A stretch of DNA of 40,835 bases from Octopus bimaculoides (taxonomy: Eukaryota), in NCBI RefSeq assembly GCF_001194135.2, contig NC_068996.1:49324810-49365644 (forward strand). The letters are read 5' to 3'. The notes beneath the pieces were generated by a model. The model ran no database searches. It was not told the origin of the DNA and saw nothing but the letters and a program-made list of their open reading frames with translations. Shown one piece after another: positions 2,601 to 40,835 of this stretch (position 1 is the stretch's first letter; every line of letters starts with the position of its first letter). The translations under genes and the position numbers were made by a program.

Positions 2601-2988
2601 GGCGCAGGAGTGGCTGTGTGGTAAGCAGCTTGCTTACCAACCACATGGTTTCAGGTTCAGTCCCACTGTGTGGCACCTTGGACAAGTGTCTTCTACTATA
2701 GCCTTGGGCCGACCAAAGCCTTGTGAGCGGATTTGGTAGACGGAAACTGAAAGAAGCTCGTCGTATATGTGTTTGTGCGTCTGTGTTTGCCCCCCCCCTC
2801 CAACATCGCTTGACAACCGATGCTGGTGTGTTTATGTTCCCGTAACTTAGCGGTTCGGCAAAAGAGACCAATAGAATAAGTACTAGGCTTACAAAGAATA
2901 AGTCCTAGAGTTGATTTGCTCGACTAAAGCGGTGCTCCAGCATGGCCGCCGTCAAATGACTGAAACAAGTAAAAGAGTAAAAAAAGAG
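2601..2988 (+). mobile_element. tRNA-derived SINE family A, full length (reference copy)
   Basis: A-box-like gtggctgtgtggt, B-box-like ggttcagtccc, central microsatellite, 3' tail ggtgctccagcatggccg..gtcaaatgactgaaac; more than 15 homologous pieces in the window. Confidence 0.85.
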
Positions 2989-3332
2989 AGTAATTCTTGA
3001 TTTAGCTTATATAAATTACAATGATTCTTTTGGGGTTTTCCTTTGCTTTCTGTAACCCTTTTCCTCTCTCCTCTGTATCCCATGCGATACGCAGGAGATA
3101 TTTCCCTATCATCCATGCATCATATATGATGCTCATATTCCCATTTTTTTCTTACTGCTAGAGTAACTTAGGGACTTATGAAAGGAAAGCTTTATGTTAC
3201 TTAGAACGTATGAAATGAGGGCGAACTAAAGGTTTGAGAACAAGAATAGAAACTTAGGACAAACTTAGGAAAACACTTTGTCCAGGCAAAGGGTTATCTT
3301 CTTTTCTCTTTTACCTGTCTCAGGCATTAGAT

Positions 3333-4582: not shown

Positions 4583-4648
4583 NNNNNNNNNNNNNNNNNN
4601 NNNNNNNNNNNNNNNNNNNNNNNNNNNNNNNNNNNNNNNNNNNNNNNN

Positions 4649-5790: not shown

Positions 5791-6634
5791 TTGCTCAAAA
5801 ACACAACGAACCACCTGGTCTAGGATTTGAAACAACGATGCTGCCATCGTGAGTGCAATACTATATATATATATATATATATATATNNNNNNNNNNNNNN
5901 NNNNNNNNNNNNNNNNNNNNNNNNNNNNNNNNNNNNNNNNNNNNNNNNNNNNNNNNNNNNNNNNNNNNNNNNNNNNNNNNNNNNNNNNNNNNNNNNNNNN
6001 NNNNNNNNNNNNNNNNNNNNNNNNNNNNNNNNNNNNNNNNNNNNNNNNNNNNNNNNNNNNNNNNNNNNNNNNNNNNNNNNNNNNNNNNNNNNNNNNNNNN
6101 NNNNNNNNNNNNNNNNNNNNNNNNNNNNNNNNNNNNNNNNNNNNNNNNNNNNNNNNNNNNNNNNNNNNNNNNNNNNNNNNNNNNNNNNNNNNNNNNNNNN
6201 NNNNNNNNNNNNNNNNNNNNNNNNNNNNNNNNNNNNNNNNNNNNNNNNNNNNNNNNNNNNNNNNNNNNNNNNNNNNNNNNNNNNNNNNNNNNNNNNNNNN
6301 NNNNNNNNNNNNNNNNNNNNNNNNNNNNNNNNNNNNNNNNNNNNNNNNNNNNNNNNNNNNNNNNNNNNNNNNNNNNNNNNNNNNNNNNNNNNNNNNNNNN
6401 NNNNNNNNNNNNNNNNNNNNNNNNNNNNNNNNNNNNNNNNNNNNNNNNNNNNNNNNNNNNNNNNNNNNNNNNNNNNNNNNNNNNNNNNNNNNNNNNNNNN
6501 NNNNNNNNNNNNNNNNNNNNNNNNNNNNNNNNNNNNNNNNNNNNNNNNNNNNNNNNNNNNNNNNNNNNNNNNNNNNNNNNNNNNNNNNNNNNNNNNNNNN
6601 NNNNNNNNNNNNNNNNNNNNNNTATATATATATA

Positions 6635-8464: not shown

Positions 8465-9239
8465 TAGCTGCAATGTTCTTTTGNNNNNNNNNNNNNNNNN
8501 NNNNNNNNNNNNNNNNNNNNNNNNNNNNNNNNNNNNNNNNNNNNNNNNNNNNNNNNNNNNNNNNNNNNNNNNNNNNNNNNNNNNNNNNNNNNNNNNNNNN
8601 NNNNNNNNNNNNNNNNNNNNNNNNNNNNNNNNNNNNNNNNNNNNNNNNNNNNNNNNNNNNNNNNNNNNNNNNNNNNNNNNNNNNNNNNNNNNNNNNNNNN
8701 NNNNNNNNNNNNNNNNNNNNNNNNNNNNNNNNNNNNNNNNNNNNNNNNNNNNNNNNNNNNNNNNNNNNNNNNNNNNNNNNNNNNNNNNNNNNNNNNNNNN
8801 NNNNNNNNNNNNNNNNNNNNNNNNNNNNNNNNNNNNNNNNNNNNNNNNNNNNNNNNNNNNNNNNNNNNNNNNNNNNNNNNNNNNNNNNNNNNNNNNNNNN
8901 NNNNNNNNNNNNNNNNNNNNNNNNNNNNNNNNNNNNNNNNNNNNNNNNNNNNNNNNNNNNNNNNNNNNNNNNNNNNNNNNNNNNNNNNNNNNNNNNNNNN
9001 NNNNNNNNNNNNNNNNNNNNNNNNNNNNNNNNNNNNNNNNNNNNNNNNNNNNNNNNNNNNNNNNNNNNNNNNNNNNNNNNNNNNNNNNNNNNNNNNNNNN
9101 NNNNNNNNNNNNNNNNNNNNNNNNNNNNNNNNNNNNNNNNNNNNNNNNNNNNNNNNNNNNNNNNNNNNNNNNNNNNNNNNNNNNNNNNNNNAAGCTACTT
9201 ACCACACAGCCACTCCGGCACCTGTACGCCCTTTTAAAG

Positions 9240-9473: not shown

Positions 9474-10041
9474 AAACATGTCGAGTGACTTCCCCAGAAG
9501 TTTCCTTGTATAGCAACAGCTATGTCGTATGTAATAATGTACGATTGGATCCGCGGAAACGTTCAATCACGTTACGCGGAACGTTCGTACAGCAACAACT
9601 ATCAAATTAAATCGTACGAATGGGTTTTTTTCCTTTTGTTTTGTTTTTTTGCTCTTCATGTAGTTTACCATCGTTCAATGTTGTAGCCACATCAAGTGAT
9701 GATCTATAAAGGGAGAGAGAGTCTACGAATCTGTTGGCATCCCGGAAAAGCTGCGTGACTCCGATGTTCTTCGTCACGCGCGTGCACGTGTACATAACGC
9801 ATTCTTTCAGTTATAACGACTGCTTTACATTTATGTTGAGTCGTATAATTTATTGCTTGTGTTGAATCAACATATATATATATGTGTGTGTGTAGTTCAA
9901 GAACACAACGCACTACCCGATCCAGGAATCGAAACCCCGATCTCGCGGTCGTGAGTGCAAGATTATGCTTATGTTTACATCGGTATGCAAAAGAGAAAAC
10001 GGTAATATTTACGCTGCCTTTTATGTGTGTGTGTGTATGTG

Positions 10042-10087
<46 letters not shown>

Positions 10088-10088
<1 letters not shown>

Positions 10089-10265
10089 CCGGAGTAAGCA
10101 CATAAAATGTGCAAAAAGGTGGAAAAAAGAGTACTCAAATACCAGAGGTAGAGTAATATGCTTTATTTAAAAGCAGCAGAAATATAACAAAAGACTTACT
10201 CGGAGTTTCACGTTCCCGTGAAACTCCGAGTAACAGTCTTTTGTTATATTTCTGCTGCTTTTAAA
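10088..10265. mobile_element. Probable Penelope-like (PLE) non-autonomous relic E1 ending in a palindrome
   Basis: Shares gagtaagcacataaa...ccagaggtagagtaatatgcttt with 13776 and 38640; (TA)n flank. PLE assignment is inferred. Confidence 0.5.
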
Positions 10266-10358
10266 NNNNNNNNNNNNNNNNNNNNNNNNNNNNNNNNNNN
10301 NNNNNNNNNNNNNNNNNNNNNNNNNNNNNNNNNNNNNNNNNNNNNNNNNNNNNNNNNN

Positions 10359-10397
<39 letters not shown>

Positions 10398-10400
<3 letters not shown>

Positions 10401-10500
10401 ATTATAGAAGACAGATGTCCAACCTGCCGCGTAGTGGGACTGAACCTAGAACCATGTGGTTAGGAAGCAAACTTATTACCCAGCCACACGCCTGCGCCTA
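10398..10500 (-). mobile_element. Family A SINE 5' part
   Basis: Reverse complement of the head (gtgggactgaacctagaaccatgtgg). Confidence 0.7.
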
Positions 10501-11062
10501 TGGAACCATTTAGATTGCCAGGAATATTTTTTCTGTTCTCTCTTCCTCTCTCAACATTTAAAATGTTTGGCTGAAATAAAAGAAAAAGAAATTGAAGAAG
10601 CAAATGGTATGGGTTTTTTTTGCTGTATTACTGCAAAATATTATTGACCATGACTTAAAAGATCACCTGTCAAAATAATTTGTCTTCAAAGGAAAAAAAA
10701 CCCAAATATTTTGAAATATTTCGTCTCTTGAAACACATTGGTTCAAGTACCCAGACTATAGTGTAGCCGAATATTCATAATATTATTTTGTCCTAAAACT
10801 TATTTTTTTAATATATTAAAGCCTATTAAATATGAAAATATATTATCCTTCAAATAATAAAAGGCGGTTTTCTTTACCGAAGTCCTCCCATTTTGTTTAG
10901 ATTCAATGCGATGACACGACTTGGTAAAAAGTGTAGGAATCGGAAGGATAAGTGACGCTAGGCTTTAGCCTTCGAAACTTCCGGTTTGCCAAAAAGATAA
11001 AAAGTACCTGTAAAGGTACGCCGGTTTATTCAACAATTACGTCTGCAGCTGTACGGTCAACT

Positions 11063-11570
11063 ATACCGAAAAGAAGAAAGCTATATAACCTCAGGTTTCC
11101 GCAAAAAAATTATTAAAACGATAATGCAGGATAATAATTTTTTATGTGAACAGGATCACTGCTCCCATGCCTGTTATGATATCCCAAGCTTTAGGTCTAT
11201 ATATAACATATACGCTAGGTCGCTCATTTTAAAGTCTGCTGAAGTTGCCCGAATGGAAAATTCGGAAATCTTGACAGCGGCAAATATTAAGCAAGTTATT
11301 GAATCAGATGAAGAGTTTAGTCACCTTCGTAATTCGGTTGCCAAGTTTGTTGACCGCAATTTCTTGGCAAAAACTATGGAGAAACGTGAAATAACGGTTG
11401 CAAATTGTAGATTCCTGAAGAGAAAACTTTCGTCTACAAGTGACGAGCCTCAACAGACGAAAAAAATAATATCAAAGGATATTCCTGGAGATGATAATGA
11501 GAAATCGCATCAGATAAGTACGACTTTCGAATGTGTGGCTCGTCCTTCTACTTCTGTCTCAAACTTATGA
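11063..11570 (+). pseudogene. DRAP1: Intronless, divergent DRAP1 (NC2-alpha)-like histone-fold gene copy with disabled start and three indels
   Basis: Three-frame reconstruction: (I)PKRRKLYNLRFPQK / IIKTIMQDNNF / YVNRITAPMPVMISQALGLY / ARSLILKSAEVARMENSEILTAANIKQVIESDEEFSHLRNSVA. It is colinear with human DRAP1 as recalled ([88 protein letters not shown]), about 34/88 identities by hand. Lesions: ATG>ATA at 11063, +1 in A7 (11103-11109), +1 in T6 (11138-11143), +11 nt (11203-11213). An open ~75-aa tail runs to the stop at 11570. Confidence 0.82.
11124..11570 (+). CDS. Residual 148-aa ORF of the DRAP1-like copy (C-terminal half of histone fold plus tail); translation unproven
   Basis: ORF track; frame is stop-free from 11001. 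From residue ~30 it matches DRAP1 helices 2-3-C. Confidence 0.3.
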   Translation: MQDNNFLCEQDHCSHACYDIPSFRSIYNIYARSLILKSAEVARMENSEILTAANIKQVIESDEEFSHLRNSVAKFVDRNFLAKTMEKREITVANCRFLKRKLSSTSDEPQQTKKIISKDIPGDDNEKSHQISTTFECVARPSTSVSNL

Positions 11571-11856
11571 CTTTTCTTAAAGAGTTTTCTTTAACAGGGG
11601 CTCCTGTTTTATTTTCCCCTAGTTTTACACATTTGAAATAACAGAAAGAAGATGATGACACTGTGATTGCCACGTCTTTATAGAAGGCTATCTTTTTAAT
11701 TAGATATTTGAAGATATGACCTTCTGTAATTTAAAAAAACAAATAATGCTGTTATTTAATTTCATACGACTAGAAAGTCGCTGCGGCAGATGTTACATTT
11801 TCAGGTAGAAAAGTATCTGGGATTGAAGTCAGGTCCCGTTTACGAAGTGCTCATTT

Positions 11857-11866
11857 CAAGATGGCG
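11857..11866 (+). promoter_or_regulatory. YY1-type motif CAAGATGGCG in a CpG-retaining non-repeat segment
   Basis: Exact match to the AAGATGGCG core; function unverified. Confidence 0.3.
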
Positions 11867-13445
11867 TGTTCGATTTTCAGTGTTTAAAATTGCTTTACAA
11901 CCATCCTAGAGCACTTCTTTCGAAAACGATCGGTTTTTTGTCATCTACTTTCGTGTTTTCTGCATCCTTACACACACAACGCCCGAAAGAATACATCCAA
12001 AAGATGCCCCTCCTTTATTCAGCTTTGGTAACTGTAGGTTTGACCAGGAGGACGACGAAACTACATCTTCGTTCTGGGTCATTTAAACGACCTAAGAGAA
12101 CTGCTGCATTTCTCCCCAAGGTTTACCCAATGACTGGACCTTTTGTATGAAACTACTTGTTCTTTTTGTTGTAGTTAATGGCTTTTCTTCTTCCATCACC
12201 AACTTGATTAGGTGGTCCTTGCATTTCTTGCTTTGGGATGTGAGTGAGTGTCATGAACACATTGTCACGGTGTTACATGTTCCCTTCCTCTTTGGAAAAA
12301 AAAAAACTCTGACAAGATGTCCCATAAACTCTACACAGCTACCCCACTCCTTGCATGCCTTAGTGTACCGTCTGCTGAGGTTTATTGGTGTTCGGTGTCT
12401 GATATGCATTGCTCGTAGCAAGAAGACGATCCGGAAGGACTGACTCCAGTTTGCCTATATATATATATAATATTAAGGATAAAAATCCAAATTTGCAGGT
12501 AAAAACTCAATTAAATTCAAATTATTAAAAATTAAAATTAAATTTTCACTGTATTATTTATTGTGCTTTTACTTATTAATTTTTCTATATGTGACAGTGG
12601 ATTTTCATCGATGAGTTCATGAACCTTGGTCCTTTTCCCTAAAACTATATATATATATAATATTAAGGATAAAAATCCAAATTTGCAGGTAAAAACTCAA
12701 TTAAATTCNNNNNNNNNNTATATATGTCTTTTTACGTATTTGTACGTGTATATAAATATATATTTATGTATGCGCACATGTGTATTTATGTATTTTTAGA
12801 AGAAAAAAAAAAATGAAGTTTTCTCTCATTAGAATTATCTCGTTTGTTGCTTTTAAATTTTAAACACTCTTAGAATGAGATTTTTGTCTTCTAACTTTAT
12901 GAATAATATCAATTAATCGGAGGTACTATGTTCTTTGAACTCACTATATTACATATTTGACTCTATATCGTTTATGCATTCGAAATTGGAAAAGCTACCA
13001 TAGCATGTTTTCTCTCATAGCTCTGTTGCTCACATTAATAATCAACTCTACTAAATTCCTCTATTTTCAACATACATCGTGCATTTGTTTTACGTCCATT
13101 TTTGTTCTCGTGTTTTGCATGGATTGGCAATGGCGTAGCCAACACGGGAGCGAACGTTCACCACCACCAAACATACTTTTCAAAATTGGCGCCTTTTGAA
13201 TAATTTCCCTTTTAATGGTTCACTTATGCGATAAAAGTCGAACCCCCATCCATGGAATTTCATTTTTTCCACGTTACACATACTTTCATACATAATGACG
13301 CCATAACCTCTCGACACCGGATGATCCCGTGAAGTGTCATTTTTTTTTTTTCATGTCACACCCATATCAATAGTTGTAAGTTTCACACAATATTTGTTAT
13401 TGCAACCTGCAATTAATAATTGTAGAATACAAATACCTATACTGG

Positions 13446-14350: not shown

Positions 14351-14770
14351 ATATATNNNNNNNNNNNNNNNNNNNNNNNNNNNNNNNNNNNNNNNNNNNN
14401 NNNNNNNNNNNNNNNNNNNNNNNNNNNNNNNNNNNNNNNNNNNNNNNNNNNNNNNNNNNNNNNNNNNNNNNNNNNNNNNNNNNNNNNNNNNNNNNNNNNN
14501 NNNNNATATATATATATATATACGCCGTGGAAACCGGGAAACCGGCCCTTATGAGTCTATATGACTGACTTTAGAACCTGGCTATGCTTCTCTCGTTTGG
14601 AAGTTGGAATCTGTTGTTTGCGAAATTGTTTCACACCGGATGTTCTTTTAAGCACTAACTTGTTTTGCTTGTTGGCAGGAGAAACTGACAACAATGCTGT
14701 CTTCTCGCTGTACTTTCGTACAAGCAATCGCAGATTGCAGAGACGGATAAGCAAACACACATGCACGCAC

Positions 14771-17368: not shown

Positions 17369-18068
17369 GTGGTGAATATCACCAGATGCCGAGATTATGA
17401 ACTGACAATAAACGATCAACAACCAGAATCAACCGGTTCAGTTAACAAACCAATGTTATCAGCTGTAATCATGGAATGCAGAGGTGAGATATTTTNNNNN
17501 NNNNNNNNNNNNNNNNNNNNNNNNNNNNNNNNNNNNNNNGTTATCAGCTGTAATCATGGAATGCAGAGGTGAGATATTTTTGCTAGGAAAAGACAAATGT
17601 GACTAAAAACCAAGCCAGATGTTTGAGTCAATGGTGAATGCCACTAAATGCTGAGCAGGTGAATGGACAAGAAACTGTCAATGGTCAAGATCAACCAGTT
17701 TAGTTAGTGGTGAGCTAATGCTACTATCATCTGTAGCTGTGACATGCGCAGATGAGATATTTCAGTTAGAAAAAGACCAATGTAGCTGAAACCTAAGTCA
17801 GATGTTCAAATTAATGGTGAATCAAATCAATATCACTAAATACTAAGCAGATGAACTGACAACAAATGATCAACCGGTTCAGTTAACAAACCAATGTTAT
17901 CAGCTGTAATCATGGAATGCAGAGGTGAGATATTTTTGCTAGGAAAAGACAAATGTGACTAAAAACCAAGCCAGATGTTCGAGTCAATGGTGAATGTCAC
18001 CAGATGCTGAACAGATGAACAGACAACAAACTGTCAATGGCTAGGCTCAACCAGTTCAGTTAGTGATC
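17369..18068. repeat. Degenerate tandem repeat, ~173-183-bp monomers in A-B-A-B order
   Basis: (a/g)tggtgaat anchors at 17369, 17631, 17814, 17987; 17540-17640 is nearly identical to 17897-17996. Confidence 0.8.
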
Positions 18069-19282: not shown

Positions 19283-19443
19283 AGTGGGTGTGTGGTAAGA
19301 AGCTTGCTTACCAACCACTTGTTTCAGGGTTCAGTCCCACTGCATGGTACCTTGGAAAAGTGCCTTCTTCTATAGCCTTGAGCCAACCAAAGCCTTGTGA
19401 GTGGATTTGGTAGACGGAAACTGAAAGAAGCCTGTTGTGTATG

Positions 19444-32613: not shown

Positions 32614-32968
32614 AAAGCTTGCTCACAAAGCACATGGTTCTGGGTTCAGTCCCACTGCGTGACACGTTGTGCAAGTGTCTTCTACTATAGTTTCAGGCCA
32701 ACCAAAACCTTGTGAGTGGATTTGGTAAACGGAAACTGAAAGAAGCCTGTGCGCGCGTGCACGCGCGCATATGTATGTGTCTGTGTTCATATCTGTCTTT
32801 GTCTCGTCACTGCTTGACAACCAGTGATGGTGTGTTACTTCCCTGTAACTTAGTGGTTCAGCAAAACAGACTGATTAGAATAAGTACTGAGCTTAAATAA
32901 ATAATAAGTCCTGGAAGTCAATTTGTTCGACTAAAACCCTTTAAGGCGGTGCTCCAGCATGGCCACAA
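32614..32968 (+). mobile_element. Family A SINE, near full length
   Basis: Colinear with the 2601 copy. Confidence 0.8.
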
Positions 32969-37814: not shown

Positions 37815-38600
37815 ATATAGGTGCATGCTTGGATGTGTGGTAAGAAGTGTGCTTCCCAATCATGTGGTCCTGGGTTCAGTTCCACTGCATGGTACTTGAG
37901 GTAAGTGTCTTCTACTATTGCCCTCAGCTAACCAAAGCCTTGTGGGTGGATTTGCTAAACAAAAACTGAAAGAAGCTTGTCATATTCTTTCATTCTTTCA
38001 CTTGTTTCAGTCATTTGACAACGGCCATGCTGGAGCACCGCCTTTAGTTGAACAAAGTCTAGTACTTATTCTATCGGTCTCTTTTGCCAAACCACTAACT
38101 TATGGGGGAGTAAACACACCATCATCGGTTGTCATGCTATGGTGGGGGGACAAATAGACACGCATATAACAAATACATACATATATATATATATATACGA
38201 CAGGCTTCTTTCAGTTTCTGTCTGCCAAATCCACTCACAAGGCTTTGGTCAGCCCAAAGCTATAGTAGAAGACACTTGCCCAAGGTGCCACACATTGGGA
38301 CTGAACCCGGAACCATGTGGTTAGTAAGTAAGCTACTTACCATCAAGCCACTCCTTCACCTATATATAAATTCATATTATAGGTGTGTGTGTGTGTGTTT
38401 GCATTCATTCCACCCACCACCACTTGACAACTGGTATTGGTTTGTTTAAGTCCTTGTGACCTAGTGGTTCAGCAAAAGGAACTGATGGAATATGTACCAA
38501 GCTTTAGAAAAATAAGTATTGGGGTGCATTTGTTAAACTAAATCATTTAAGGTTGTGCCTCAGCATGGCTGCCGTCCAATGACTGACACAATCAGAAGAT
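37815..38600. mobile_element. Cluster of family A SINEs: + 5' half (37815-37985), - full copy (38000-38358), + 3' half (38385-38600)
   Basis: Each piece aligns to the 2601 copy in the stated orientation. Confidence 0.75.
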
Positions 38601-39093: not shown

Positions 39094-39180
39094 CATAAGC
39101 ATGGCTGTGTGATAAGAAGCTTGCTTCCCAACCACATAGTTCTAGGTTCAGTTCCACTGTGTGACACCTTGAGTAAGTGA
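39088..39180 (+). mobile_element. Family A SINE head fragment
   Basis: catggctgtgtgataagaagcttgcttcccaaccac...ggttcagttcc. Confidence 0.65.
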
Positions 39181-40544: not shown

Positions 40545-40835
40545 ATCATCATCATCATCATCATCATCATCGTTTAACGTCCACTTTCCATGCTAGCATG
40601 GGTTGGACGATTTGACTGAGGACTGGTGAAACCGGATGGCAACACCAGGCTCCAATCTAATTTGGCAGAGTTTCTACAGCTGGATGCCCTTCCTAACACC
40701 AACCACTCAGAGAGTGTAGTGGGTGCTTTTACGTGTCACCCGCACGAAAACGGCCACGCTCGAAATGGTGTCTTTTATGTGCCACCCGCACAAGCCAGTC
40801 CAGGGGCACTGGCAACGATCTCACTCGAAAATCCT
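40545..40835 (-). mobile_element. Family D retroposon, young copy, runs off the window
   Basis: (cat)n tail abutting (TA)n; CpGs retained. Confidence 0.85.

What the first reader, a model, noticed from the sequence alone, without database searches (positions are those of the whole stretch)
11063..11570. Hidden, fast-diverged DRAP1/NC2-alpha paralog split over three frames
Seen: the reconstructed path is colinear with DRAP1 (about 39% identity to human, from memory), has no internal stop, and needs only an ATA start, two +1 homopolymer slips and one 11-nt insertion. Established: the DRAP1 histone fold is normally far more conserved across animals and pairs with DR1 to repress TBP. Inference: an intronless (retro)copy that evolved as a coding gene long enough to diverge, then was disabled recently, or whose lesions are assembly or allele artefacts. 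The ORF track misses the N-terminal match entirely.
Basis: partly seen in the sequence, partly recalled or inferred. Interest (0 to 1): 0.72.

Follow-up and report, generated by a model that had tools for sequence, protein, structure and literature searches.

The report
Decayed duplicate of octopus DRAP1 gene
This is a broken, unannotated extra copy of the octopus gene for the transcription co-repressor subunit DRAP1/NC2-alpha, copied as DNA together with its promoter and now full of frameshifts: essentially an ordinary pseudogene, with one oddity, an excess of amino-acid-changing substitutions.

Summary
Window 11063-11570, read across three frames, is a DRAP1/NC2-alpha histone fold (PDB 1jfi_A E=1.9e-13, 39% identity; best of 1.84 billion proteins are octopod DRAP1s at about 45%). 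It is incomplete, though. Homology to the Octopus bimaculoides DRAP1 locus runs from about 10498 to about 11668. It covers some 0.55 kb of 5' flank and promoter and a C-terminal remnant beyond the ORF stop.

Against the parent there are at least seven disabling lesions: ATG>ATA, +1, +4, +11, -20, -5 and an in-frame TAA. The "retrocopy" reading fails. The functional DRAP1 coding sequence is itself a single exon in octopus, argonaut and cuttlefish (abalone has introns). The copy also carries upstream flank and an inverted block, and has no 3'UTR or poly(A). It is therefore a DNA-level duplicate.

No purifying selection is detectable on the copy (pairwise dN/dS about 1.0-1.1, against 0.10 in the functional genes). 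Unexpectedly, the branch estimate is above 1 (omega 3.4; bootstrap CI 1.5 upward). The transcribed part is more diverged than its own flank, and stops are fewer than expected (0 against 4.2, P=0.012). A short phase as a fast-evolving coding gene is therefore possible but unproven. Modest interest.

The parts
10498..10585 (-). Block homologous, in inverted orientation, to the parental 5' flank (L001 9454-9534, about -547..-467 from the parental ATG). It marks the 5' edge of the duplicated segment.
   Evidence: blastn: 75% identity over 88 nt on the minus strand. An interspersed repeat lies directly upstream at 10405-10497.
10617..10700 (+). Far-upstream flank shared with the parental locus but not alignable to Argonauta.
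   Evidence: 83% identity, 70/84. The Argonauta row is unalignable here.
10756..10870 (+). Copy of the distal DRAP1 promoter region (motif TGTAGCCGAATATTC, among others), conserved from octopus to argonaut and slow-evolving in the copy.
   Evidence: 85% identity to the parent over -307..-163. Copy-specific changes are only 11/94 at sites conserved between Ob and Ah.
10871..11062 (+). Copy of the proximal promoter and 5'UTR, including the conserved GAAACTTCCG motif at 10974-10983 and CTGTAAAGGTACG.
   Evidence: Aligned to L001, to the transcript-like contig L002 (which starts at -188) and to Argonauta. Copy-specific changes are 33/120 in -162..-1.
11063..11065 (+). Former start codon, now ATA.
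   Evidence: Aligns with the ATG of all four functional genes. No in-frame ATG lies upstream in that frame.
11063..11340 (+). Histone-fold region (parental codons 1-90), split over three frames.
   Evidence: 41 of 90 codons encode the same amino acid as the inferred Octopus ancestor.
11103..11110 (+). +1 frameshift in or next to an A7 run.
   Evidence: Alignment. Homopolymer list.
11138..11143 (+). +4 insertion at a T6 run (frameshift).
11205..11215 (+). +11 insertion (frameshift). Together with the +4 it restores the frame of the ATG at 11124.
11124..11570 (+). The 148-codon ORF seen by an ORF finder. It starts at the codon equal to parental Met21. It reads 11144-11215 out of the parental frame, 11216-11549 in the parental frame, and the last codons out of frame again.
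   Evidence: Pfam finds no histone fold in this product. No gene with this product is on record.
11341..11549 (+). Tail region still in the parental frame, with in-frame deletions of 27 nt (11362|11363), 3 nt (11460|11461) and 33 nt (11510|11511).
   Evidence: tblastn HSP 11208-11513, E=8e-12.
11549..11572 (+). 20-nt deletion (11549|11550) and 5-nt deletion (11571|11572), both frameshifting. The resulting premature TGA is at 11568-11570.
11588..11668 (+). Remnant of the C-terminal end of the coding sequence (...APVLF...HLK*QKEDDD..T). It has a 21-nt deletion (11624|11625), a TAA at 11639-11641 in the parental frame, lost YD codons and a disrupted stop. Homology ends here.
   Evidence: blastn 85% over 41 nt and 82% over 33 nt. 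tblastn E=0.005 in a different frame. Alignment. No 3'UTR homology: Smith-Waterman score 14 against shuffled 14.1, control 309.

Best explanation
The locus is a non-processed (DNA-level) duplicate of the single-exon octopod DRAP1/NC2-alpha gene.

A segment of about 1.2 kb was copied. It held about 0.55 kb of 5' flank and promoter, the 5'UTR and the whole coding sequence. It ended a few bases after the stop codon, so the 3'UTR and poly(A) signal were left behind. An 88-bp block at the 5' edge was inverted. By silent-site patterns, the duplication happened in the Octopus lineage after its split from Argonauta and before the split of O. bimaculoides from the species behind contig L002.

The copy cannot make NC2-alpha today. 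The start codon is ATA. Three insertions break the first half of the histone fold. Two deletions break the tail, and there are a premature TGA and a further TAA. Along its lineage the protein sequence shows no purifying selection.

Shown: the homology, its extent, the lesions, the intronless parent, and the absence of constraint.

Inferred: the mechanism of duplication, the position of the transcription start near -190, and the history. On the history I put about 0.45 on 'never a conserved gene, decaying since or soon after duplication'. I put about 0.35-0.4 on 'briefly expressed and fast-evolving before it died'.
For: Identity:
- PDB 1jfi_A E=1.9e-13 and 4wzs_A (E. cuniculi NC2-alpha) E=3.3e-6.
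- PF00808.
- The best of 1.84e9 representatives is P0001 (E=4.6e-20), named dr1-associated corepressor-like, Argonauta.
- 67% nucleotide identity to the O. bimaculoides DRAP1 locus over window 10617-11504, E=5e-79.

DNA-level origin:
- The parental coding sequence is a single exon in three coleoids, against at least 6 exons in Haliotis.
- Homology runs to -445, plus an inverted block at about -480..-565 in window coordinates (the parental counterpart is at -547..-467). This lies beyond the part conserved in Argonauta.
- There is no 3'UTR homology although the Ob and Osp 3'UTRs align strongly.
- No poly(A) tract is visible downstream of 11668 and no terminal direct repeat was found.

Dead:
- Lesions are listed.
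- The ORF product has no Pfam histone fold.
- No such protein is in the collections.

No constraint:
- NG86 dN/dS is 1.1 (against Ob) and 0.94 (against Osp), while the functional pairs give 0.08-0.18.
- Amino-acid identity (68 observed, 68.9 simulated), synonymous codons (14 against 16.8) and the BLOSUM62 mean equal a neutral simulation.
- omega_W = omega_background is rejected, 2dlnL = 63.8.

Timing:
- At third positions the copy shares 33 states with Octopus against Argonauta, and 10 the other way.
Against: - A purely neutral history does not fit everything.
- Branch omega is 3.4-4.2, with LRT against omega=1 of 8.8-14.5. Only 0.3% of bootstraps are <=1. None of 1000 neutral simulations reaches it.
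- Copy-specific change is 33% at codon positions 1+2 and 27.5% in the 5'UTR. It is only 11.7% in the distal promoter, and 17% in total (both lineages) in the far flank.
- Zero stops occur in 155 aligned codons where 4.2 are expected (P=0.012).
- The transcription start is inferred only from the 5' end of a Logan contig whose library type I could not check. A very long 5'UTR is therefore not strictly excluded.
- The species of the window was not established. It shares repeats at up to 97% identity with O. bimaculoides.
Confidence: 0.8

Rival explanations
1. Transient functional paralogue. The duplicate kept a working promoter and was expressed. Its protein evolved under positive selection, or under selection to stop it competing for the partner DR1/NC2-beta. 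Only later did it accumulate frameshifts.
For: - omega on the copy's branch is 3.4 (7.5 in the histone fold, 1.8 in the tail). This is robust to three codon-frequency models. The bootstrap 95% CI is 1.5 upward. 0/1000 neutral simulations reach it.
- The distal promoter changed as little in the copy (11 sites) as in the functional gene (8 sites).
- Stop deficit: P=0.012.
- Identity at hydrophobic fold positions is slightly high: 20 against 15.2, P=0.054.
- The +4 and +11 insertions sum to 15 nt and keep the frame of the ATG at 11124.
Against: - The non-coding 5'UTR is accelerated almost as much as replacement sites (27.5% against 33%). Selection on the protein does not explain that.
- Replacements overall are no more conservative than random.
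- Indels are 5 frameshifting to 5 in-frame, not different from neutral.
- At sites conserved in all parents, the deficit at third positions is modest (19/92 against 94/284, Fisher P=0.026, weaker after correcting for base composition).
- Whole-gene omega far above 1 is rare.
- No closer, intact relative exists among 1.84e9 protein representatives.
- There is ascertainment bias, because the locus was flagged for having a long ORF.
Confidence: 0.35
2. Processed pseudogene. An mRNA of DRAP1 was reverse-transcribed and inserted, which is why there are no introns.
For: - There are no introns in the copy.
- The homologous segment ends close to the stop codon, which could mimic a transcript with a very short 3'UTR.
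Against: - The parent has no introns either.
- Homology continues at least 250 bp upstream of the 5' end of the transcript-like contig. It reaches sequence not conserved in Argonauta and includes an inverted block.
- There is no A-rich tract after 11668, no 3'UTR homology and no flanking direct repeats.
Confidence: 0.08
3. The 148-codon ORF (11124-11570) is still a gene. It would encode an N-terminally truncated, partly frame-shifted NC2-alpha-derived protein.
For: - The ORF is open for 148 codons in DNA of 35% G+C.
- It starts at the conserved Met21 codon.
- All indels inside it are frame-preserving in sum.
- Promoter motifs are retained.
Against: - The product lacks helix alpha1. It has about 24 out-of-frame codons (11144-11215) in place of L1 and the first half of alpha2.
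- Pfam does not recognise a histone fold in it.
- No identical or similar protein is called anywhere.
- There is no purifying selection.
- Other ORFs of 110-157 codons occur by chance or in repeats in the same window.
- The 5'UTR copy carries ATGs at 10906-10908 and 10911-10913, upstream of the ATG at 11124.
Confidence: 0.05
4. The lesions are assembly or sequencing artefacts and the gene is intact in the animal.
For: - Two of the lesions sit at homopolymers (A7, T6).
- The assembly is a gapped draft, with nine N runs in the window.
Against: - The lesions also include an ATG>ATA substitution, a 4-nt and an 11-nt insertion, 20-nt and 5-nt deletions and a TAA.
- About 31% of aligned coding positions differ from the parent, with dN/dS about 1. 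No assembly error produces that.
- No Ns lie inside 10498-11680.
Confidence: 0.03

Closest known systems
DRAP1 / NC2-alpha (H2A-like histone-fold subunit of Negative Cofactor 2; human structure 1JFI chain A; O. bimaculoides protein P0151, Argonauta hians P0001)
   Same: - The order of elements matches from the promoter motifs through the former start codon, the histone fold and the basic and acidic tail to the EDDD..T end.
- 39% identity to human over the fold.
- 44% identity to octopus DRAP1.
- 67-85% nucleotide identity to the octopus locus, depending on the segment.
   Different: - There is no start codon.
- The fold is split over three frames.
- The tail is truncated and frameshifted.
- omega is at least 1, against 0.03-0.10 in the functional genes.
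- It cannot yield a protein able to form the histone-fold handshake with DR1 (the last point is an inference from the lesions).
Non-processed (duplicated) pseudogenes arising from small segmental duplications
   Same: - It was copied with 5' flank and promoter.
- There is a rearranged (inverted) edge.
- There are multiple frameshifts and stops.
- There is no purifying selection.
   Different: - The transcribed part (5'UTR and coding sequence) has diverged 2-4 times more than the copy's own upstream flank.
- Replacement changes exceed silent ones.
- A plain neutral pseudogene should not show either pattern.
Processed pseudogenes / retrocopies
   Same: It is intronless and sits away from the 20.7 kb of the parental locus that I examined.
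   Different: - The parent is intronless too.
- Upstream flank is included.
- There is no 3'UTR, no poly(A) and no target-site duplication.
Fast-evolving, often germline-specific paralogues of general transcription factors (for example the Drosophila testis TAFs and TBP-related factors; recalled from memory and from the review PMC3142196, whose abstract appeared and which I did not read in full)
   Same: It is a duplicate of a core promoter regulator with accelerated protein evolution. This applies only if the omega>1 signal is real.
   Different: - Those paralogues are intact, expressed and conserved among related species.
- Here the copy is broken, and no intact relative or expression could be shown.

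Membership tests
NC2-alpha / DRAP1 | Sequence closer to NC2-alpha than to any other histone-fold family (NF-YC, POLE4, CHRAC1, H2A) | tested here: met
   1jfi_A E=1.9e-13 and 4wzs_A E=3.3e-6. The next chains are H2A at E>=0.039. The named top hits among the 1.84e9 representatives are DRAP1.
NC2-alpha / DRAP1 | Descent from the resident DRAP1 locus (nucleotide homology including non-coding flank) | tested here: met
   blastn E=5e-79 against L001. Promoter motifs are shared.
NC2-alpha / DRAP1 | Uninterrupted ORF with initiator ATG encoding alpha1-L1-alpha2-L2-alpha3 | tested here: not met
   ATA start, with +1, +4 and +11 insertions inside codons 1-50. The real ORF product has no PF00808 hit.
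NC2-alpha / DRAP1 | Strong purifying selection on the fold (omega about 0.03 among cephalopods) | tested here: not met
   Fold omega on the copy's branch is 7.5. Equality with the background is rejected, 2dlnL=69. Pairwise omega is 0.9-1.3.
NC2-alpha / DRAP1 | Conserved C-terminal EDDDYDT end in frame | tested here: not met
   The remnant at 11645-11668 lies behind a premature TGA, in another frame, after a TAA, and has lost the YD codons.
NC2-alpha / DRAP1 | Heterodimer with DR1/NC2-beta and binding to TBP-DNA | not testable with these tools
   This needs expression and binding assays.
Processed pseudogene (retrocopy) | Introns of the parent are missing | tested here: inconclusive
   The parent coding sequence has no introns in O. 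bimaculoides, A. hians or A. pharaonis, so the feature cannot discriminate.
Processed pseudogene (retrocopy) | Homology confined to the mRNA, including the 3'UTR, and followed by poly(A) | tested here: not met
   Homology extends to at least -445, plus an inverted block. There is none in the 3'UTR (Smith-Waterman score equals shuffled) and no A tract.
Processed pseudogene (retrocopy) | Target-site duplications at both ends | tested here: not met
   No direct repeat flanks the ends among families of at least 11 nt in 10000-13000. The age of the copy could have erased them.
Non-processed duplicated pseudogene | Non-transcribed flank or promoter copied with the gene | tested here: met
   Caveat: the transcription start is inferred from contig L002.
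Non-processed duplicated pseudogene | Disabling lesions and loss of purifying selection | tested here: met
Functional fast-evolving paralogue | Intact ORF, expression, and orthologues kept in related species | tested here: not met
   The ORF is broken. No such protein is called in the collections. Transcription and other octopod genomes could not be examined with these tools.

The most novel reading that the evidence does not exclude
After a small DNA duplication carried the DRAP1 promoter along, the extra NC2-alpha copy was expressed in an Octopus ancestor. Its histone fold was then driven to change faster than the neutral rate (omega about 3-7). That could have been neofunctionalisation, for example as a germline-specific variant. 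It could also have been selection to stop a surplus subunit from titrating DR1/NC2-beta, i.e. adaptive inactivation. The frameshifts would have finished it later. A related side-issue: the functional coleoid DRAP1 is itself intronless while abalone has at least 6 exons, so it may be an ancient retrogene that replaced its parent.
Probability: 0.33. Interest if true: 0.55.

Novelty: new member of a known kind. Interest (0 to 1): 0.3.

Why it matters
In itself it matters little. It is one more unannotated pseudogene, useful for annotation: it should not be called as a gene, and the 148-codon ORF is misleading.

Two by-products are of some value.

1. The functional DRAP1 of coleoid cephalopods is a single-exon gene with a promoter conserved from octopus to argonaut, and with a shared AACTTCCG motif in cuttlefish. 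A gastropod has a multi-exon gene. This bears on retrogene replacement or intron loss in cephalopods.

2. The copy shows more replacement than silent change, and a transcribed part more diverged than its flank. If other Octopus genomes confirm this, it would be a compact case for studying what happens to a surplus subunit of an obligate heterodimer after duplication.

Tried and rejected
1. The word-indexed protein search with the stitched product found nothing. The exhaustive HMMER search was needed.
2. An exact look-up of the 148-aa ORF in 153 billion gene positions found nothing on record. No orthologue or transcript could be fetched.
3. Retrocopy hallmarks were sought and not found: poly(A), target-site duplications and 3'UTR homology.
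4. Gene conversion in patches was considered as the cause of uneven divergence. It was rejected because copy-specific changes and shared Octopus states are spread evenly along the coding sequence.
5. CpG decay or a GA-context (deaminase-like) signature was considered as the cause of the excess change at codon positions 1 and 2. G sites change about 50% in GA, GC and GG contexts alike, and CpG is not special.
6. Base composition explains only part of the excess. The expected change is 33%, 30% and 28.5% at positions 1, 2 and 3 (my arithmetic from the rates and the compositions).
7. 'In-frame deletions prove coding' was dropped. Counting all indels gives 5 in-frame to 5 frameshifting, binomial P about 0.2 (my arithmetic).
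8. Retention of hydrophobic fold positions was tested and is not significant: 26/29 against 23.6, P=0.19.
9. An overprinted ORF in another frame or strand was considered as the cause of omega>1. No such ORF exists.
10. Rfam and tRNA scans of the window were empty.
11. Pfam on eight other ORFs of the window was empty.
12. The literature holds nothing on cephalopod DRAP1 copies.
13. The first long null simulation timed out and was rerun with faster code.
Full report
**Check of the observation**

- IPKRRKLYNLRFPQK (frame of 11063);
- IIKTIMQDNNF (frame of 11124);
- VNRITAPMPVMISQALGLYI (third frame);
- RSLILKSAEVARMENSEILTAANIKQVIESDEEFSHLRNSV... (frame of 11124 again).

Stitched together, they match human NC2-alpha (PDB 1jfi chain A) over residues 1-79 with E=1.9e-13 and 31/79 identities, i.e. 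39%. The next chain is NC2-alpha of Encephalitozoon (4wzs_A, 3.3e-6). H2A chains follow at E>=0.04. Pfam PF00808 is passed at 27.7 bits against a cut-off of 21.4. The ORF as it really stands (11124-11570) hits no histone-fold family.

An exhaustive HMMER search of 1.84 billion representatives gave 349 hits. The best is P0001 (E=4.6e-20, 45% identity), and the match runs on into the tail. A follow-up search names P0001 as dr1-associated corepressor-like of Argonauta hians. It also returns P0151, the DRAP1 of Octopus bimaculoides. The family assignment stands.

**The parent gene and the true extent of the copy**

P0151 is encoded at L001 10001-10705. That is 705 nt for 234 codons plus the stop, so a single exon. 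The same holds for Argonauta (696 nt) and the cuttlefish Acanthosepion pharaonis (732 nt). Transcript-like Logan contigs are colinear with the genomes from -188 to +446 (octopus) and over 1135 nt (cuttlefish). The abalone gene spans 8.3 kb with at least six coding exons. Being intronless is therefore the normal state of coleoid DRAP1 and says nothing about retroposition.

blastn of the window against L001 shows the following:
- 67% identity over window 10617-11504, aligned to L001 9543-10457. This includes about 450 bp upstream of the start codon.
- Two more blocks beyond the ORF stop: 11587-11627 and 11626-11658. They correspond to the parental ...APVLFPPSS... and HLKGQQQEDDD... codons.
- An 88-bp block (10498-10585) matching L001 9454-9534 in inverted orientation.
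- Directly upstream of that, an interspersed repeat (10405-10497) with ten other copies in the window.
- Downstream of about 11668 there is no similarity to the parental 3'UTR. The Smith-Waterman score is 14 against 14.1 for shuffles, while the Ob and L002 3'UTRs score 309.
- There is no A tract and no flanking direct repeat.

The three-way alignment with Argonauta shows that the promoter and 5'UTR are conserved among functional genes from about -310 to the ATG. Conserved motifs include TGTAGCCGA.TATTCGTAAT, TTTGTTTAGAT, ACTTCCG and CTGT.AAGGTA. The copy keeps these motifs. The copy and the O. bimaculoides gene also share sequence further upstream that is not alignable in Argonauta.

The unit that was duplicated is thus about 1.2 kb of genomic DNA: flank, promoter, 5'UTR and coding sequence, cut just after the stop. 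That is the signature of a small DNA-level duplication with a rearranged edge, not of an mRNA copy. The one inferred step is the transcription start, which I place near -190 because contig L002 begins at -188.

**Lesions**

These come from a five-way alignment with the codon alignment of four functional genes:
- ATG>ATA at 11063;
- +1 in or next to the A7 run at 11103-11109;
- +4 at the T6 run at 11138-11143;
- +11 at 11205-11215;
- in-frame deletions of 27 nt (11362|11363), 3 nt (11460|11461) and 33 nt (11510|11511);
- a 20-nt deletion at 11549|11550, which shifts the frame and produces the TGA at 11568-11570;
- a 5-nt deletion at 11571|11572;
- a 21-nt deletion at 11624|11625;
- a TAA at 11639-11641 in the parental frame;
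- loss of the YD codons and of the stop.

The path 'without internal stop' ends in a premature stop, and about a third of the protein lies beyond it in ruins. There are no Ns inside 10498-11680. Lesions of 4, 11 and 20 nt, together with about 31% substituted coding positions, cannot be assembly noise.

tblastn finds only the two in-frame pieces (11208-11513 and 11588-11659). This confirms that a standard search misses the N-terminal part.

**Mode of evolution**

Pairwise Nei-Gojobori values are dN=0.41, dS=0.37 and dN/dS=1.1 against O. bimaculoides, and 0.94 against the L002 species. The functional genes give 0.08-0.18, and 0.02-0.04 in the fold.

I ran a simulation that mutates the inferred Octopus ancestor with the observed base-specific substitution probabilities at all positions. 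It reproduces the observed amino-acid identity (68 against 68.9 codons), the number of synonymously changed codons (14 against 16.8) and the mean BLOSUM62 score of replacements (-0.31 against -0.39). Retention of hydrophobic fold positions is not significantly high. There is thus no trace of the purifying selection that a 'coding gene that diverged' would leave.

**What does not fit a plain neutral history**

1. The same simulation expects 4.2 stop codons in the 155 aligned codons, and none is seen (P=0.012). Over all 194 codons it expects 6.0 and one is seen (P=0.016).

2. A branch codon model on the tree (copy, Argonauta, (Ob, L002)) gives omega 0.10 for the functional genes and 3.4 for the copy.
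- The LRT against omega=1 is 8.8.
- omega is 7.5 in the fold and 1.8 in the tail.
- F1x4 and equal codon frequencies give 4.2 and 3.7.
- The bootstrap 95% interval starts at 1.5, and 0.3% of replicates are <=1.
- None of 1000 neutral simulations reaches 3.39, and one reaches the LRT.

3. I counted sites identical in all functional genes and different in the copy.
- Codon positions 1+2: 94/284 (33%).
- Position 3: 19/92 (21%).
- -162..-1: 33/120 (27.5%).
- Distal promoter: 11/94 (12%).
- Far flank: the two paralogues differ at only 14/84 positions in total.
- The switch from slow to fast lies near -200, about where the transcript-like contig starts.

Third-position states place the origin of the copy inside the Octopus lineage: 33 are shared with Octopus against Argonauta and 10 the other way. 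Under a clock, the copy has therefore had time for roughly 0.1-0.2 neutral changes per site. This is my estimate from the third-position and dS values. Replacement sites show about 0.44.

CpG or GA context, conversion patches, base composition (rates and compositions) and an overlapping ORF do not explain this.

**Arguments for caution**

- The 5'UTR, which is non-coding, is accelerated too.
- The third-position deficit at strictly conserved sites is modest (P=0.026 before correcting for composition).
- All indels together are 5 in-frame to 5 frameshifting, which is not unusual.
- The locus was picked because it has a long ORF, which inflates the stop-codon argument.

**Conclusion on mechanism**

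I am confident (about 0.8) of three things:
- the locus is a non-processed duplicate of DRAP1;
- it cannot now produce NC2-alpha;
- it has not been under purifying selection for any detectable part of its history.

Whether it decayed from the start or first lived briefly as an expressed, rapidly changing protein cannot be settled from one sequence. The second case could mean a new function, or selection against a surplus partner of DR1. I put about 0.45 on the first and about 0.35 on the second. The excess change in the transcribed part remains unexplained in the first case. The 5'UTR acceleration remains unexplained in the second.

The alternatives are unlikely: retrocopy (0.08), a still-coding 148-residue product (0.05) and assembly artefact (0.03).

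**Comparison with what is known, and novelty**

It works like nothing any more. It is derived from NC2-alpha but fails the tested membership criteria for a functional family member: ATG, intact fold, in-frame C-terminus and purifying selection. It fits the class of duplicated, non-processed pseudogenes.

I found no paper on DRAP1 copies in cephalopods. No intact closer relative exists among 1.84 billion protein representatives. It is therefore a new member of a known kind.

The species was not established. Interspersed repeats match O. bimaculoides at up to 97%, and G+C content of 28-41% and gaps next to (TA)n runs suit a draft octopus assembly. I could not search other octopod genomes, read sets or transcriptomes with the available tools. 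That search is the decisive step.

Noticed in passing
L001 10001-10705; L003 3001-3696; L004 3001-3732; L007 501-8814: The functional DRAP1 coding sequence is a single exon in Octopus bimaculoides, Argonauta hians and Acanthosepion pharaonis. In the gastropod Haliotis rubra it has at least six coding exons over 8.3 kb. The coleoid gene may be an ancient retrogene that replaced its parent, or may have lost all its introns.
   Followed up: partly
window 10756-11062; L001 9697-10000; L003 about 2700-3000; L004 about 2940-2965: The DRAP1 promoter and 5'UTR are conserved from octopus to argonaut over about 310 bp. An ACTTCCG (ETS-like) motif is also present about 45 bp upstream of the cuttlefish ATG.
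   Followed up: partly
window 10405-10497 (copies at 2599-2695, 19294-19368, 30663-30748, 32615-32684, 38266-38341, 39113-39158 and others): A short interspersed repeat of about 90 bp with ten other copies in the window (72-89% identity). One copy abuts the 5' edge of the duplicated segment. ARAGORN finds no tRNA in it.
   Followed up: partly
window 4583-4648, 5887-6622, 8484-9191, 10266-10358, 12709-12718, 14357-14505, 17496-17539, 21843-21977, 29844-30549: Nine runs of N. Several are flanked by (TA)n or (TATG)-type microsatellites. These are draft-assembly gaps, and they create long fake ORFs of X in the ORF list.
   Followed up: yes
window 10166-10196 / 10235-10265: A perfect 31-nt inverted repeat separated by 38 nt, sitting between two (TA)n arrays (10043-10088 and 10359-10397). 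It may be a small foldback or MITE-like element.
   Followed up: no
window 12455-12518 / 12645-12708: Two 64-nt segments, 100% identical and 190 nt apart, next to a 10-N gap at 12709-12718. This is either a recent tandem duplication or an assembly duplication at a gap edge.
   Followed up: no
window 21587-22237: A 216-codon ORF interrupted by a gap. From memory its sequence (…FVLSRLDYCSQLWSPH…) looks like the C-terminal part of a LINE reverse-transcriptase ORF. Pfam gave no hit to either half, so this is unverified.
   Followed up: partly
window 40560-40835 and L001 20096-20368: A 276-bp repeat copy, 97% identical between the window and the O. bimaculoides chromosome locus. Other copies are at 76-92%. 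This indicates a young repeat family and a source genome that is O. bimaculoides or a close relative.
   Followed up: no
window 10871-11668 compared with 10617-10870: Within the copy, divergence from the parent jumps from about 5-12% (copy-specific) upstream of about -200 to 27-35% downstream. The jump coincides with the presumed transcription start and affects both the 5'UTR and the coding sequence. The cause is unknown.
   Followed up: partly
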